Positions 37,355-63,508 of a stretch of 64,000 bases of DNA are shown here, one piece after another. The stretch lies in assembly GCF_964204865.1 (NCBI RefSeq), contig NC_135251.1, forward strand, positions 12,338,001 to 12,402,000, read 5' to 3'. Position numbers and translations under genes: made by a program. Numbering within the stretch: the stretch's first letter is position 1; every line of letters begins with the position of its first letter. The notes below the pieces were generated by a model, which searched no databases, had not been told where the DNA came from, and was given only the letters and a program-made list of their open reading frames with translations. The stretch is from Styela clava. Taxonomy: Eukaryota.

Positions 37355-37431
37355 TCACTTTTGCATTGAAATATTGCAGATTATAGACTCTAAGTGATAT
37401 CAACTGATCCGGAATCGTGAAATCTGTCGCA

Positions 37432-39668
37432 ATGAAGTTGCTCATACTATCGTGCATCGTCTTCGTGGTTGTCACTGATCGTTTCGTCATGGGTAAGTTA
37501 TAAGATATTTAGATAGTGTAAGTCGTAAAGGATGTTTGGCTACGATAATATTTTGGCATTTATATACTGTCACTAACAATAATGTTTGTATCGCCCAATA
37601 TGCTCCCCAGCTTTTCAAGTTAGACTGGGTGCTTCCAAATTTCGGGGGCGGTAAAAATTGTGCAAATTTATTTTAGTGGATAACTGCGCTATGTTGATAA
37701 AGACGCGCTGTTGAAAATAACGAGTACTGTTATGAATTATGTATATATATATACACTAAGAATAAGTATCAATACACCGAATTATTTTACAGGAGACCCC
37801 AAAGCCGCGACTTGTTCTTTTGGCGAAAACCGTGGAAAAATACATTTCATGGAAAAAGTAAGTTTAAAATTTTGAATCTATATCTCTCATTTTTGCTTCT
37901 CTTCCGCCACTTTTTAATTTTAATTTTTAGGATAACAAGATTCGAGTTCATGTTAGCATTCACAACGTACCCGGACACACTTACGGCATGCACGTTCACC
38001 AAAACAAGATTTCACCTGGTGCAACAACATGTGACGGTCTTGGGACTCATTTTAATCCAACAGGAGATCCGAACAAGTAAGATTAATAAGAGTGAGCTTG
38101 AGTGTTTTTGCTATTTGAGATACTCAAAAATATTTCGGATCCACGAACACTTAAAATACTTGGTTATGTGTTAAATACGCGTAAAGAGAGAGATTTATTG
38201 CCACAAAGTCAACACTATTATAAACATAATACACTGAAGAAAGAAACGCATCATTAATAACAGTGATTGATTATTGTTTTGTGCGGGCCGGTGTGCAGAA
38301 CGGATTATAGTCATCTAGGCTCCCGATCCTTGTGTATGCTGTATATAGGCTCGTCATGGCATTATATAGTAGGCCTACCATAGGTGAATGCAAGTGAGAT
38401 TAAATAGAAATAAATATGTAGGATAAAAAAATATGTAAGATAAAATAAAATGAGTGAATGCGTAAAGCATGTAAAAATTTCATCTACTATTTTTCCTCAT
38501 CTCATCCCTATTGCAGTGATAAAGGCGATCTCAACCCAAACGGAGACAAACCCTTGGCAGCGTCAAAAAGCGGACACCTTCATTTGAACTCTTACTACAT
38601 TGATACTCTCACTCTTGACGACGCGCCTGTAGGAAATGGAATTGTCGGTCGTAGCGTTGTGGTGAGAATGTTAATTACTATTCTAAAGTAAATGACTTTC
38701 AATACCTCCTTTTATATGTACGGTATAAATTTCGTTCTTGATTACACAAATCTCATTGAGATGTGCTGGAATGGAGTGTGAGCGTAGTAATTCTCAAATG
38801 TACGAGTCACATTTCGAAGTGTATTTTGTATTCTAAAAATTTACTAAAATATATTCCCTGAGGTGACCGTACATTTGAACCCATGCGTATATCCACGGGT
38901 TAAATCTATATGCGGGTGCTAAAACCCATGGGTTAGGGTTAGTATGGGTTTAACTATCCGTGAAACAAAAAAAAAATTATAGGTGCAATAGCATACAGGT
39001 GCAATTGTCATGGGTTCAAATGTACGTGGGTTCAAATGTAATGGAACCATTCCCTGACATCTAATTTCAACCAGAAGATTTTCAAAAATTGATGTTGAAT
39101 CTCAAAGAGTATCTAATTGCTGTTTGAAATAAAACTAAAAAAGGATGTTTTTCGGGCATGCTCAATTTACATATTTGTACTATTCAAGGAAATGAACACA
39201 AGGAACGCAGCTTCGTTTAGCTCGTATTATTCGACAAATCAAACATATGACTTCACTTACCCATGAGTAAACTAGAATCCTGATAGTGAACTGTACTCAC
39301 TCCTCACCATCTTATTATTGCATCACAGAACAGGTTCCGAACATGACAATAAGTCGTTTTGGGCGCTCCGGAAGTATTCGTACCAAGATGACGCTCAACC
39401 TGAACAACCCTAACCTGGTACACATACTATGTTCAGGTAGTACGCCATCTTGATACGATACTTCGGGAGCATCTCGCGTCTTGGTTATTAAATCATCCCA
39501 TAATATAAGTGGAATAAGTACGAATATCCATGTTCTTCAAAATTGATTGTAATATAGAAATATATTCCAGAAATGATTTTCTATTTCTAGCTCCACGTTG
39601 ACGGAAAGAAATTTTGCTGTAACATAGTAAGAGATACATACGTCGAAGCAAACTTCCTCCAACATTGA
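37432..39668 (+). CDS. Secreted Cu/Zn-SOD-fold protein of the copper-only SOD type, 164 aa, 5 exons
   Basis: Exons 37432-37492, 37793-37857, 37931-38076, 38517-38661, 39591-39668; all GT-AG and in phase. Protein: MKLLILSCIVFVVVTDRFVMGDPKAATCSFGENRGKIHFMEKDNKIRVHVSIHNVPGHTYGMHVHQNKISPGATTCDGLGTHFNPTGDPNNDKGDLNPNGDKPLAASKSGHLHLNSYYIDTLTLDDAPVGNGIVGRSVVLHVDGKKFCCNIVRDTYVEANFLQH*. It has a signal peptide and the SOD motifs GMHVH, C-x4-THFNP, GDL and IVGRSVVLH. AATAAA at 39716-39721. Confidence 0.88.
38862..39048. mobile_element. MITE with 9-bp TSD in SOD intron 4
   Basis: GG..CC ends, inverted tacatttgaaccca/tgggttcaaatgta, exact TSD ATTCCCTGA (38853-38861 and 39049-39057), internal GGGTTAGGGTTAG. 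Confidence 0.8.
39362..39472. mobile_element. Short palindromic family A MITE in SOD intron 4
   Basis: GGCGCTCCGGAAGTA...TACTTCGGGAGCA; similar to 61669-61779. Confidence 0.65.
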
Positions 39669-39894: not shown

Positions 39895-40375
39895 GATATA
39901 GCGCAGGGTGGTACACGTAAGCGTTGGACGGTTACGGCTTCCTCCACCATCAAGTCTACGCTTCTGAAAATAAATAATTGGCTAAATAACTAATCCTATA
40001 CCTGACATGGACTCGTAACTGCCTCTCGTCCGGTTACCAGTTCATGTCGGATATGAGATTAGTTAGTCAGTTAGCGTGAACCACCCCGCGGCGGTGAGCA
40101 GTACAGCAATCCTCTCGCACTTAATTCAACCCCCGGGATTCCAATCAGAGGTACGGTGGCAATATGCCAAGTGTATTTCAAACGCTTATCACGATGGACC
40201 AGTTCATGTCGGATATGAGATTAGTTAGTCAGTAAGCGTGAACCACCCCGCGGCGGTGAGCAGTACAGCAATCCTCTTGCACTTAATTCAACCCCCGGGA
40301 TTCCAATCAGAGGTACGGTGGCAATATGCCAAGTGTATTTCAAACGCTTATCACGATGAGCCACATCGCCGAGCC
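39895..40375. mobile_element. Rearranged tRNA-derived SINE pair with a 162-bp tandem duplication
   Basis: A plus-oriented SINE segment abuts a minus-oriented copy. 40036-40197 is repeated at 40198-40358 with about 2 substitutions. Confidence 0.65.
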
Positions 40376-40969
40376 AGAGTATACACTGTCAAATACGATG
40401 ATTTTGCAGCGACGTCAAGTCTGAATTAACCCATCATCATTTCAGGAAACAATGTCACAACTTGATGCAAATTAGGCGATCAAAATTAGTTACCTTCATA
40501 TTGGTACACACACTTCCGGAGCGCCCGAAATGCCATGGTTTGCCTTATATTTATATCATCATGGTGTCTTCCTTCCATATAATTACGAAAATTTCCAACC
40601 CGCTTTCCCTAGCCACCATGAACACGATTATTATACCAAAATCTCAAATATTTTCAACTTGAAAGCATGATGTTCTGCAAGTTGTTTATTAGCGATTTTG
40701 CAACTAATTACTTAAATTAAATTATGAAATTGCAACAATTACTTGAATTAAAAAAAGATGTCAAAATACTAGTTTTTAATTAAATCAAAATTCAACGGAC
40801 CCCAAAAATGATGTAAAAGTTGTATAATCCAATAAACACAGTGTGAATTATAATGAGGGATGGGTTGATCAACCAGATACTCAACAAAATTGTTATTTTC
40901 CACCTTGTACCAGGAACAGAAATCTGCTAAGAATTATCGAAGACACGAGCTGTGTTAGTTATATCAGAA

Positions 40970-41571: not shown

Positions 41572-45576
<4,005 letters not shown>

Positions 45577-60000: not shown

Positions 60001-63000
60001 TTATGTAACAAATAAAAAAAATTTCAATATTCCACCATTTTTGCAAATCTTTTTTTTATTAATGAACATGAAAACATAAAAAAAGCAAGTAATATTTTGT
60101 TTTAATCAACTTAGGGTGTGAGATTAAACTGCATACCTTTTGTCACCAGCACATCCTGTTCCTGATTAATTCTCTGTGATTTGTGGAAATTTTAGGAATC
60201 ATTTATCATTCACGTATAAATAAATAAAAGTGTGTTCCCTATTAAATTAGCACAGAATGATTTTTTCTATTTTAAATCAATCCACCCATATGATAAATAT
60301 AATGCGTGTGTGAAATAGTGGAGTAATCGTGAAAATCACAATCGATGACATATGCGTCCCTGAGTTTCGTGAAATGTATTGCATAACCATAACATTGTGG
60401 TGGTATTTTAACTGGCTAGTCCGTGTTTCTGGTTTGAATAAATTGTGTTGTTTATTCAAAACAGCATTTAGTTTGAATTTATCAATCAAGTATTTTCTAA
60501 TATATATAATTTATTTAATATGCAACGGATGAATATATATATCAGTTGTCCACTGTGCCACAAATTAGTAAATACAGTATAATCTTTATTCAGATTATCA
60601 GCGCCCGGTGTACTTTAAAATATTATAAAAAATAAAATCTGAATTTCATTCACTGCTTCGGTTAGTTTTTTGGTTTTACTTTCATATGTGTGTGTGGTGA
60701 GAAAATGTTATGACCTAATCAAACAATGAAACGAATTTTATATCTTTAAATGTAATATTCTGATAGGTGTATTAAATAACGTTTTACCTTTCTAATCTCG
60801 TGATTTTTACAGTGGTTGACAGATGTTTGCTATTTCCATGTCTTAATTCGGGAACGTGCACATCAATTGGTTGTCAAAGAAAATGCCAATGCATGGGGGG
60901 TTATATGGGAGAAAATTGTAAAAATAGTAAGTGGCGTCTTTATTTTTTTTAAATGATTTCAGAATTTGCACATTTTACGAGTAATTTGCACATTTAACGT
61001 TTTCAAAATATCAATTTTTATACATTTTGGTTGTAACTAGTTCCTGTCTCAGTTTTGTTGGCTACAAATCATCACCTGATGTTGGAGGAAAATAGATTTT
61101 ATTGAAATTTATTCAATATGTAAAGTTCTGAGACAGACCGACATAAGAAACGATATTTTTGTTGTAATTAGTTCCCTCATAAACCAAAAAATAACTGGGG
61201 TTCGTTTTACAGAATAAATAGAGTGAAAGTATATTAGTGTTTTTACAAACGAGTTGGGTTCTCTTTCTTGATCTAGGATAAAATTCAATTTTTTCATACC
61301 GCTCAATATTTTTAGACGTGTGCGATTCGTCACCTTGCACAAATGGAGGAACTTGTGAACTCTCGACTAAAGAGCCGTATTACACATGCGTTTGTCAGCC
61401 AGAATATCGAGGAACTCAGTGTAAAAGTAAGTAATATATATTGTCAATTCTACCGAATCCAAATAGAAAAAAAGATTCTCCTGTAGAGTTGAGACGATTC
61501 ATACAAGATATATTGGCTATTTTACTGTATTTATAGTCCCGAAGCATTCGTTTGCATCAACCATAATATTTTGATGATTAATTGATCTTTAAGTCTATGG
61601 TCTCGCAATATCAATTATAAACAACAGCCTGCATTACAACAAGGGCTTGTTTTAAATCATTTTTTTTTGGACCTCCAGAAGTATGCGCACCAAGATGACG
61701 CACAACCTGAACATAGTATGTGTGTACCGGTTAGGATTCAGGTTGTGCGACATCTTGGTGCGCATACTTCTGGAGCACCTTTTTTTTGTATTTTTCATTG
61801 AAATTACCCCTCGCATCAGCGCAAAACTACACGGCAAAATAGTGCGCTTCAGCGACTGCGCTGGAATAATACTCTCAAAAATGTAGAAAATATTTTTGCT
61901 CCCATTTTCACTCTTATCGCGTAGCATTATCGTCAAGTTAGTACCCACACCAAAGCCATAAGATTTTATGAGTCAATGGTTTTTCGAGATATCAGAGAAA
62001 AGGTATTTGATACACAGGAAACAAATAATACAGCCATTTGCTGCTCTACAAACATCGAAAACACTTCTCGGGTAAATTCGAGACTACAATGAAGAAAATC
62101 ATAAGAAATCATTTTCAACAAATTAGCAAACCCATAACTCTGCTATTTACAGGACTTAAATAAAACGTCTGTCGTAATTCTAGATTGAAATCAAACAATT
62201 AATATCGCTCGCAGAAATACTAAAACGCGCTTTGGCATATTGGGCGTCAGAGGACACAATGTTGTCATCAAAGTATTCTTATGCCATATGAATCAAGAAG
62301 GAGCGGAAAGCCGATAAAATGAATTAATCATATGGCAAACCCCATTCCCTTGTCTATTTATCGGTCCATATCGGGTTCGAGAATAATTAATTGTATCAGA
62401 CGCATGTGCTTGATGGTTGAGGAATCCGTAACTTAACGGAGCTTTCGTAAATTACCCAAAAGCGGTGAGGAATTCAGCAATCAATCCTCTTGCTCATATT
62501 CATCCCTCACGTGATTCGAATCTGTGAATTTAAACAAGGTGCGATGACAAGCTTGAATACACGCCTTATATGATCATATTAATAGCCAATAGCGATGTTT
62601 GTCATCTTAGAAAGTCGGCATTTTAAAGGCTGTGAATCTATGGACACGACGTTTTTTAGTGTGAATTGCGTCAGTATATTCAATGAACACTTGCGAATGA
62701 ATACAAAACTTTTGAAAATCCATAAAAGTTGTCATTTTATGCAGATATAAGATTATTCCATGATACAACCAACAACTGCAAATATCACGTCAACCTTTAT
62801 GATAAAAAATCATTCGTCGAGACGAATTCAACTTGTAGCAGTCTTGGAGGAGCGATAGCAATGATGAAAACAACAGAAATACAAGACTTGGTTGAAAGTC
62901 GGATAATAAAGCAATATGGAGCCACAGGAGAAGCACTTGAGTTTTGGATTGGTGGATTTAAAGTTAGTAATTCATGGATGTGGGTTGATGGTACAGACGT

Positions 63001-63508
63001 ACCAACAACAGGAAAAGATTCAAAATGGTCAACAAACCACCACACTTCCACGGGCAGTATGATTCTTAGTCCGCATGGCGGCGATAGAGAAAACATGATG
63101 TGGTTTGCTAAACCAAACAATAGGAAGCGCGGATACATATGTGAAATATCAGGTATAATTTTAAAAAATAGTACAAGAGTAAACCTATTTCCAAATCATA
63201 ACTGCTTTGTGCTTAAGACCAACATTCAATATCACAAATCTATACATACACATGGCGCGGCTTTCCTGAAACCTTTAACATTAGTTTGTTGATATTTTTT
63301 TATATTCGATTATCATCAAATGTATTATTCTAATATATGAGTGCATGTATATATTATAACGTTCTAGTATTGGTAATGATTTGAATTTTCACAGCGGTTG
63401 ACAGATGTTTGCTATTTCCATGTCATAATTCGGGAACTTGCACACAAATTGGTTGTCAAAAAAAGTGCGACTGCATGTGGGGTTATACGGGAGAAAATTG
63501 TGAAAATA
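57099..63508 (+). CDS. Signal-peptide-bearing EGF / C-type lectin-like domain tandem-repeat protein: SP-[EGF-CTLD-EGF]x2, continuing past the window
   Basis: Exons separated by phase-1 introns: 57099-57162 (MGLGLIISIALVISVKGESMN), 57537-57647 (EGF, CDSSPCKNGGTC...CVCHPEYQGTQC), 58833-59246 (CTLD, FWIGG..WTWADG..YICE), 60813-60926 (EGF), 61316-61426 (EGF), 62745-63152 (CTLD), 63395-63508 (EGF). The window ends on a pyrimidine-rich cttccag, a probable further acceptor. Confidence 0.88.
61669..61779. mobile_element. Short palindromic family A MITE in a lectin-gene intron
   Basis: GGACCTCCAGAAGTATGCGCACCAAGATG / CATCTTGGTGCGCATACTTCTGGAGCACC, with poly-T flanks. It is absent from the paralogous intron at about 57890. 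Confidence 0.8.
62290..62590 (-). mobile_element. Diverged tRNA-derived SINE copy
   Basis: Shares ggaaagccgataa, ttgatggttgaggaa and gattcgaa segments with 44066-44372. Confidence 0.55.

What the first reader, a model, noticed from the sequence alone, without database searches (positions are those of the whole stretch)
37432..39668. Single-domain secreted copper-only SOD-like enzyme in an animal genome
Seen: all four Cu ligands are present (H-x-H in GMHVH, H in THFNP, H in VVLH), with Cys at the disulfide positions. The Zn loop is collapsed to HFNPTGDPNNDKGDL: the His71 equivalent is absent, the His80 equivalent is Asp, and Asp83 is kept. The electrostatic loop is deleted (LH-VDGKKF-CC), and Lys sits where SOD1 has the catalytic Arg143. 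Established: loss of two Zn histidines plus the electrostatic loop defines Cu-only SODs such as Candida albicans Sod5, which has an acidic residue at the His80 position. To my knowledge single-domain forms are described from fungi, oomycetes and mycobacteria, while animals have multi-domain CSRP proteins. Inference: this intron-containing, signal-peptide-bearing, non-GPI protein may be an undescribed animal single-domain Cu-only SOD, or a secreted metal-binding protein derived from one.
Basis: partly seen in the sequence, partly recalled or inferred. Interest (0 to 1): 0.8.

Follow-up and report, generated by a model that had tools for sequence, protein, structure and literature searches.

The report
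Sea-squirt single-domain copper-only SOD-like protein
A sea squirt gene, confirmed by spliced RNA, encodes a small secreted relative of the antioxidant enzyme superoxide dismutase that keeps its copper site but has lost its zinc site and covering loop, a stand-alone form described so far mainly from fungi; whether it is an active enzyme is untested.

Summary
Window 37432-39668 (+) is a real five-exon gene of the ascidian Styela clava. Spliced contigs from three studies carry all four introns exactly as modelled and no extra exon. Its 164-aa product is identical to a public, uncharacterised predicted protein.

It has one Sod_Cu domain (Pfam E 4.2e-12). All four Cu histidines and the disulfide cysteines are kept. 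There is no histidine where the zinc ligands sit. Loop VII is 8 residues, against 8-15 in 60 Cu-only-type domains and 26 in the canonical S. clava SOD. The model's best structural matches are Candida SOD5, but they are tied with canonical SODs.

The protein is extremely divergent and single-copy, and I found no orthologue. Phylogeny cannot say whether it belongs to the old Cu-only lineage or arose secondarily from a canonical SOD. HMM scores favour Cu-only by about 20 bits.

S. clava also has a multi-domain CSRP-like gene, so this single-domain gene exists in addition to it.

Activity and metal content are untested. I class it as a new variant of a known kind, of moderate interest.

The parts
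37380..37431 (+). 5' untranslated leader; probable trans-splice acceptor just upstream (cag ending at 37379)
   Evidence: Contigs of X2 and X7 begin at 37378. X7 carries 21 unmatched letters before that point. The X1 contig reads on upstream, unspliced (tables 7 and 8).
37432..37492 (+). Exon 1: start codon and hydrophobic signal-peptide-like N-terminus (20 codons plus 1 base)
   Evidence: Joint 37491/37792 (cut +1) in 3 of 3 RNA-like runs. Hydropathy peak 3.4 centred on residues 8-9.
37793..37857 (+). Exon 2: beta strands 1-2 of the barrel, with Cys28
   Evidence: Strands E24-29 and E35-42 in the model.
37931..38076 (+). Exon 3: Cu ligands H63, H65 and H82, disulfide Cys76, and the start of the shortened loop IV
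   Evidence: (Sod_Cu E 1.7e-5 for this exon alone).
38517..38661 (+). Exon 4: D92 and G94-D95 (remnant of the zinc site), strands 5-7, and the G-R-S motif
39591..39668 (+). Exon 5: Cu ligand H141, 8-residue loop VII with Lys146, the Cys148-Cys149 pair, strand 8, and the stop codon
39669..39793 (+). 3' untranslated region
   Evidence: Spliced contigs run on unspliced to 39670 (X1), 39729 (X7) and at least 39793 (X2) (table 8).

Best explanation
The gene encodes a secreted, free-standing protein of about 15.5 kDa (mature) with the Cu/Zn-SOD beta-barrel in its 'copper-only' layout. Shown: it is transcribed and spliced into a 164-codon frame. It has one Sod_Cu domain. All four copper histidines (H63, H65, H82, H141) and the loop IV to strand 8 disulfide pair (C76, C149) are kept. 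No zinc histidines remain, and loop VII is 8 residues long, so it cannot cover the metal site. Inferred mechanism, by analogy with Candida SOD5 as described in PMC13017621: the protein leaves the cell without metal and picks up Cu outside. The Cu sits in a solvent-exposed site. D95, and probably D92, hold the histidine ligands in place by hydrogen bonds, as D113 and E110 do in SOD5. Lys146 supplies the positive charge that Arg supplies in other SODs. The Cu cycles between Cu(II) and Cu(I) to dismutate superoxide outside the cell. Cys28 on strand 1 and Cys148 on strand 8 may form a second disulfide across the barrel seam; this is inferred from strand pairing only. The protein is a fast-evolving, single-copy, apparently lineage-restricted gene that coexists with a multi-domain CSRP-like gene in the same genome.
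Confidence: 0.5

Rival explanations
1. It is a secreted SOD-fold protein that no longer works as a dismutase. It may be a copper-binding or copper-buffering protein, or a recognition or structural protein of blood or tunic, as oyster dominin and the copper-less CSRPs of arthropods are thought to be.
For: Very long branch and loss of several near-invariant Cu-only residues, including Arg to Lys and Glu to Asp. The shortest loop IV of 62 rows. No orthologue found, which is typical of fast-evolving secreted or immune genes. The review states that SOD-like proteins with non-enzymatic roles exist (PMC13017621, section 9).
Against: Dominin and the copper-less CSRPs lack an intact Cu site. Here all four Cu histidines, the disulfide pair and the Gly-Asp are the very residues that survived extreme divergence, which argues for selection on metal binding. 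Lys is a conservative replacement for Arg. From memory, not seen here: a Lys mutant of human SOD1 at that position keeps a large part of its activity.
Confidence: 0.33
2. This concerns origin, not function. The gene is not a survivor or offshoot of the old opisthokont Cu-only lineage. It is a canonical Cu/Zn SOD that lost its zinc sub-loop and loop VII independently within tunicates, which would be convergence on the Cu-only layout.
For: Its intron 3 (phase 2, in the codon before D92) lies 1 base from the phase-0 intron that the CCS-like gene of the same genome has directly before the conserved His-Val-Gly-Asp. None of the introns worked out in four domains of the S. clava CSRP-like gene falls at the positions of its introns 3 and 4. 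From memory only, not verified: the exon borders of human SOD1 at residues 23/24, 79/80 and 118/119 coincide with introns 2, 3 and 4 of this gene. A tree holding it with the six tunicate canonical SODs is not rejected (p-AU 0.0875). The tree places it between the clades, not inside the Cu-only one.
Against: That constrained tree is 11.2 lnL worse, with bootstrap share 0.03. The canonical clade excludes it with support 96 in the quick tree. The Cu-only HMM beats the canonical HMM in every region tested, including the N-terminal half, which has no loop differences (37.7 against 27.4 bits). Tunicate introns turn over fast, and CSRP introns of other animals were not examined.
Confidence: 0.3
3. 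It is an annotation artefact or a decaying gene fragment.
For: No homologue closer than about 37% identity, and a single copy.
Against: Complete spliced transcripts in three studies, at high contig depth in two. The frame is open from ATG to stop, all splice sites are canonical, and no disabling variant was seen.
Confidence: 0.02

Closest known systems
Fungal Cu-only SODs (Candida albicans SOD5 type)
   Same: Single domain and extracellular. Four Cu histidines, a disulfide, no Zn histidines and a short loop VII (8 here, 8-15 in the compared set). The Asp of the Glu/Asp pair is kept. Top structural matches.
   Different: Found in an animal. No GPI signal and no Ser/Thr-rich tail. The mature protein is about 15.5 kDa, not about 25 kDa. 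Loop IV is 13 residues against 20-44, without the extra Cys pair that precedes the Glu in most rows shown. Asp replaces Glu and Lys replaces Arg. There is a Cys-Cys doublet on strand 8. Identity is 37% or less.
[quoted passage not shown]
   Same: The same domain type, and extracellular. The best genuine non-self hit of exon 3 in 1.84 billion representatives is a five-domain CSRP-like protein (P0003, E 1.5e-7).
   Different: One domain instead of 4-12. It is a separate locus 6.3 Mb away. Intron positions differ from the four S. clava CSRP domains examined. It lacks the well conserved block after the Gly-Asp-Leu.
Canonical Cu/Zn SOD (SOD1/SOD3 type; S. clava genes on C1, proteins P0127 and P0129)
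   Same: Fold, Cu ligands, disulfide and the G-R-x-hydrophobic-V-x-H motif. Possibly shared intron positions.
   Different: No Zn histidines. Loop VII is 8 residues against 26. The Pfam alignment ends at profile position 112 of 133. The canonical HMM scores 22 bits lower than the Cu-only HMM.
Oyster dominin/cavortin and copper-less arthropod CSRPs (non-enzymatic SOD-like proteins)
   Same: Secreted, divergent SOD-fold proteins of marine invertebrates.
   Different: Those have lost the Cu site (PMC13017621, section 9). This protein keeps it intact.
Mycobacterial Cu-only SodC
   Same: Lacks zinc.
   Different: Per PMC13017621, section 6, it keeps a full-length loop VII and a closed site. This protein has neither.

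Membership tests
Cu-only SOD domain (fungal SOD5 / CSRP domain type) | Cu/Zn-SOD eight-stranded beta-barrel fold | tested here: met
Cu-only SOD domain (fungal SOD5 / CSRP domain type) | Four histidine Cu ligands | tested here: met
   H63, H65, H82 and H141 lie in columns invariant over 62 rows.
Cu-only SOD domain (fungal SOD5 / CSRP domain type) | Intramolecular disulfide pair | tested here: met
   C76 is invariant and C149 lies in a column conserved at 90% or more. Actual bonding was not tested.
Cu-only SOD domain (fungal SOD5 / CSRP domain type) | No functional Zn site (the two Zn-only histidines lost) | tested here: met
   There is no His between H82 and H111, so none is available under any of the alignments.
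Cu-only SOD domain (fungal SOD5 / CSRP domain type) | Abbreviated loop VII / electrostatic loop | tested here: met
   H141-C149 spacing is 8. The 60 Cu-only-type rows have 8-15 (41 of 60 have 9, 6 of 60 have 8). The canonical S. clava SOD has 26.
Cu-only SOD domain (fungal SOD5 / CSRP domain type) | Glu/Asp signature (E110/D113 of SOD5) | tested here: inconclusive
   The Asp is kept (D95, invariant). Three residues before it stands Asp92, where 50 of 62 rows have Glu and 9 have Gln. HMMER alignments choose a different Gly-Asp.
Cu-only SOD domain (fungal SOD5 / CSRP domain type) | Extracellular location (signal peptide; secreted or GPI-anchored) | tested here: inconclusive
   Hydropathy only: an N-terminal peak of 3.4 and no hydrophobic C-terminus. 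No signal-peptide predictor or experiment was available.
Cu-only SOD domain (fungal SOD5 / CSRP domain type) | Descent from the Cu-only clade | tested here: inconclusive
   The tree gives support 50. Constrained trees on either side of the central branch differ by 0.75 lnL. The HMM difference is +22 bits for Cu-only.
Cu-only SOD domain (fungal SOD5 / CSRP domain type) | Binds Cu without Zn and dismutates superoxide | not testable with these tools
   Needs purified protein.
CSRP (Cu-only SOD repeat protein) | Four to twelve tandem Cu-only SOD-like domains on one polypeptide | tested here: not met
   Transcript contigs give a 164-codon frame with one domain and an in-frame stop.
Canonical Cu/Zn SOD (SOD1/SOD3) | Zn site (three His plus Asp in loop IV) | tested here: not met
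   Only the bridging His and the Asp remain.
Canonical Cu/Zn SOD (SOD1/SOD3) | Full-length electrostatic loop with catalytic Arg | tested here: not met
   Spacing of 8 against 26. Lys stands in the Arg column.
Dominin-type non-enzymatic SOD-like proteins | Cu site lost | tested here: not met
   The Cu site is intact. The definition is taken from PMC13017621, section 9.

The most novel reading that the evidence does not exclude
A chordate makes a free-standing, secreted, catalytically active copper-only SOD, the form that the current review literature confines to fungi and oomycetes. It would be the smallest and most stripped-down version known: about 15.5 kDa, a 13-residue remnant of the zinc loop, an 8-residue loop VII, and Lys in place of the catalytic Arg. 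It would either be a relic of the single-domain ancestor of CSRPs or, more surprisingly, a second and independent invention of the Cu-only layout from a canonical Cu/Zn SOD.
Probability: 0.35. Interest if true: 0.7.

Novelty: new variant of a known kind. Interest (0 to 1): 0.5.

Why it matters
Copper-only SODs are described as single enzymes in fungi and as tandem repeats (CSRP) in animals. A transcribed single-domain form in a tunicate, beside that animal's own CSRP-like gene, shows that this division is not strict. It also offers a minimal natural scaffold for asking which parts of loop IV and loop VII an open-site copper SOD really needs. If activity is confirmed, the Lys-for-Arg and Asp-for-Glu replacements would be natural tests of the catalytic model built on SOD5. 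If the origin proves to be a canonical SOD, it would be a case of convergent loss of the zinc site. If it is inactive, it joins dominin as an example of the SOD fold reused outside the cell.

Tried and rejected
The single-sequence AlphaFold run was too poor to use (pLDDT 46.8).

Searches for close relatives found none:
- The word-indexed search with the whole protein found only the protein itself among 26 candidates.
- Exon 3 against 1.84 billion representatives gave 7 hits at E of 0.001 or better. One was the protein itself and two were SOD-family proteins (P0003, P0006). The other four are long repetitive proteins that I judged spurious by eye only.
- The own genome held no second copy.
- Viral and metagenome contig scans found none.
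- The weak own-genome hit at C1:6478781-6478945 (E 3.87) is unrelated: it matches neither HMM.

Phylogeny could not place the protein. In one search the constrained search found a better tree than the free quick search, which shows that the quick search was unreliable.

Comparing introns with four domains of the S. clava CSRP-like gene gave no shared position. Those splice sites are my predictions from sequence, without RNA support.

Literature look-ups for the exon borders of human SOD1 and for the Arg-to-Lys mutant found nothing, so both remain recollections. Searches for Cu-only SOD together with tunicate terms, and for the gene's locus name, found no paper.

Supplementary tables could not be read. 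This includes Table S1 of PMC13017621 and the survey tables of PMC12217663. They may list tunicate CSRPs or animal single-domain forms that I could not see.

Full report
**What is there**

The stretch 37432-39668 (+) holds five open exon pieces with GT..AG borders: 37432-37492, 37793-37857, 37931-38076, 38517-38661 and 39591-39668.

I searched them exon by exon and did not join them myself. Only exon 3 matches a Pfam family on its own (Sod_Cu, E 1.7e-5). Its best matches among solved structures are Cu/Zn SODs and SOD-like proteins, at weak E-values.

Exon 3 was searched against 1.84 billion representative proteins. This returned a 164-aa protein, P0001, that contains exon 3 at 100% identity. 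Its sequence contains the five exon translations in order.

A source names P0001 'uncharacterized protein LOC120336227 [Styela clava]'. UniRef calls it 'superoxide dismutase [Cu-Zn]-like'. From here on I used P0001 by id.

**Is the gene real?**

Three runs from three studies were flagged by the tool as RNA by guess. Each holds one contig (903, 736 and 631 letters; depths 1005, 31.7 and 903.5) that skips exactly the four modelled introns. A fourth, DNA-like run covers the introns evenly and has none of these joints.

- The contigs run through the stop codon at 39666-39668 into an unspliced 3' end.
- No joint adds an exon or links to further SOD domains.
- Coding differences from the assembly are one synonymous change (37993, in all three runs) and one Ile-to-Val change (38009, in one run).

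**Anatomy**

P0001 has one Sod_Cu domain (47.1 bits, E 4.2e-12). The Pfam alignment ends at profile position 112 of 133, just after the last copper histidine.

For comparison I built a profile from P0001 plus exon pieces of the S. clava CSRP-like gene and searched proteins of 90-287 aa. It gave 676 hits at E of 0.001 or better, of which the best 120 were listed.

- The named hits are fungal proteins, four fish entries that look like CSRP fragments, and one coral entry.
- Most unnamed hits are pieces of multi-domain proteins.

From the 119 listed non-self hits I took the 60 that carry a single domain (17 named fungal, 4 named fish, 39 unnamed). I aligned them with P0001 and the canonical S. clava SOD. 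In that 62-row alignment:

- The invariant columns are H63, H65, C76, H82, P85, G94, D95, V139 and H141.
- P0001 keeps 8 of the 12 columns conserved at 90% or more.
- It departs at two glycines after the Gly-Asp-Leu, at Leu140 (Ile in most rows) and at Lys146 (Arg in most rows).

Spacings, all:

| Feature | P0001 | 60 Cu-only-type rows | Canonical S. clava SOD |
|---|---|---|---|
| H141 to C149 (loop VII) | 8 | 8-15, median 9 | 26 |
| H82 to D95 (loop IV remnant) | 13 | 20-44, median 24 | 20 |

The residue three before the invariant Asp is Asp in P0001. Across the 62 rows it is Glu in 50, Gln in 9, Asp in 1 (P0001), Tyr in 1 and His in 1 (the canonical row).

No histidine lies between H82 and H111. 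The loss of the zinc histidines therefore does not depend on which of three nearby Gly-Asp motifs is aligned to the conserved one. MAFFT and HMMER disagree on that point.

The N-terminus is strongly hydrophobic and the C-terminus is not. The mature protein would be about 15.5 kDa, with pI 6.9, four cysteines and no N-glycosylation sequon.

**Structure**

Without an alignment the model was poor. With the 62-row alignment it reached pLDDT 83.1 and pTM 0.76, with about 73 over residues 90-110.

- Foldseek finds only SOD-fold proteins.
- Megavirus SOD (14.7) and canonical SODs (14.2 and below) are within one Z unit, which the tool treats as a tie.
- The alignment used to build the model consists of Cu-only SODs, so this ranking is not independent evidence.
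- The protein language-model atlas lists two fungal SOD-domain clusters as nearest (0.91) and a chordate Cu/Zn SOD cluster third (0.90).

**Which lineage?**

S. clava has canonical SOD genes on contig C1 and a CCS-like gene on C14. It also has a multi-domain CSRP-like gene at C2:6013461-6023804 with at least four Cu-only-type domains. The single-domain gene is therefore an addition to a CSRP, not a replacement. It is single-copy.

*Tree.* The tree has 133 rows: 99 complete Cu-only-type domains, 33 canonical SODs (31 named rows chosen from the 120 listed, plus both halves of P0006), and P0001. Incomplete domains and 89 canonical hits were left out.

- P0001 has an end branch of 3.03 changes per column against a median of 0.29.
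- It sits on the branch between the two clades. The canonical clade is supported at 96 and the Cu-only side at 50.

*Constrained trees.* I used a 46-row subset under LG+F+G4:

| Placement of P0001 | lnL | p-AU |
|---|---|---|
| Cu-only side | -10891.34 | 0.575 |
| Canonical side | -10892.10 | 0.559 |
| With the six tunicate canonical SODs | -10902.51 | 0.0875 |

Sequence phylogeny therefore cannot decide. A recent origin from a tunicate canonical SOD is disfavoured but not rejected.

*Profile scores.* These lean to Cu-only: 55.4 against 33.4 bits for the whole protein, 46.8 against 33.9 for residues 22-143, and 37.7 against 27.4 for residues 22-90. The Cu-only profile is broader than my canonical one, which may flatter it. 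Pfam's broad profile gives 47.1 bits.

*Introns.* These point weakly the other way.

- Intron 3 of P0001 (phase 2, in the codon before D92) lies one base from a phase-0 intron of the CCS-like gene of the same genome.
- The introns I predict in four CSRP-like domains lie elsewhere.
- My recollection that human SOD1 has exon borders matching introns 2, 3 and 4 could not be checked.

**How it most likely works**

Shown: the gene is transcribed. The product has one domain, an intact copper-ligand set and disulfide pair, no zinc histidines, and a loop VII too short to cover the site.

Inferred, by analogy with SOD5 as reviewed in PMC13017621 (sections 6, 8 and 9 read):

- It is secreted as apo-protein and takes up Cu outside the cell.
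- The copper site is open.
- D95, and perhaps D92, orient the histidine ligands.
- Lys146 provides the positive charge.
- It dismutates superoxide outside the cell.

A second disulfide between C28 and C148 is suggested only by the pairing of strands 1 and 8. I put about even odds on real Cu-dependent SOD activity, and about one in three on a non-catalytic copper-binding or recognition role.

**What is in print**

- The 2026 review says that the ~25 kDa open-site Cu-only SODs are found only in fungi and oomycetes, and that animals have CSRPs of 4-12 repeats. It does not mention tunicates.
- Tan et al. [quoted passage not shown] The table passages shown for CSRP-bearing chordates list vertebrates and amphioxus, not tunicates.
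- No paper in the searched library combines Cu-only SOD with tunicate terms or names this locus.
- The S. clava genome paper does not mention SOD or copper.

**Earlier notes of this scan**

One note concerns the neighbouring ADAT2/GLO1 locus. Another reports a 599-aa S. clava protein with two Cu-only-SOD folds on another contig. My own-genome searches did not find the latter, so I could not test it.

**Verdict**

It has the copper-only layout in a free-standing secreted form, which is unusual for an animal. It is already annotated but uncharacterised. Its lineage and activity remain open.

Noticed in passing
L002 and L005 (G000:C2:6013461-6023804, + strand): S. clava carries a multi-domain CSRP-like gene with at least four Cu-only-type SOD domains, each split by introns at different places. 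Tunicates are not mentioned in the 2026 review text, nor in the CSRP table passages I saw in Tan et al. 2025.
   Followed up: partly
window 37378-37380: Two spliced contigs start at 37378, right at a cag acceptor. One of them carries 21 unmatched letters in front, while a third contig reads on upstream unspliced. This looks like spliced-leader trans-splicing with a visible leader candidate.
   Followed up: no
window 38812-39063 and 39316-39483 (intron 4): Two stretches are covered at summed contig depths of thousands to hundreds of thousands in all four runs, with many loose ends. They are high-copy interspersed repeats inside the intron.
   Followed up: no
window 37993 and 38009: All three transcript contigs read T where the assembly has C at 37993 (synonymous, in a His codon). 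One run reads G for A at 38009 (Ile to Val). These are probably population variants.
   Followed up: no
window 40071-40430: Two near-identical units about 160 bases apart give almost the same short open frames on both strands. This is a tandemly duplicated repeat element just downstream of the gene.
   Followed up: no
L004 (G000:C14:20671389-20672235, - strand): An SOD-like gene in several exons in which the first copper histidine position reads Leu. It is probably the copper chaperone CCS. It has a phase-0 intron directly before the His-Val-Gly-Asp.
   Followed up: partly
window 43242-43775 (-): An intronless 177-aa open frame that looks by eye like a tRNA adenosine deaminase (ADAT2).
   Followed up: no
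window 62729-63292 (+): A 187-aa open frame that looks by eye like a C-type lectin domain. It was not tested against Pfam.
   Followed up: no
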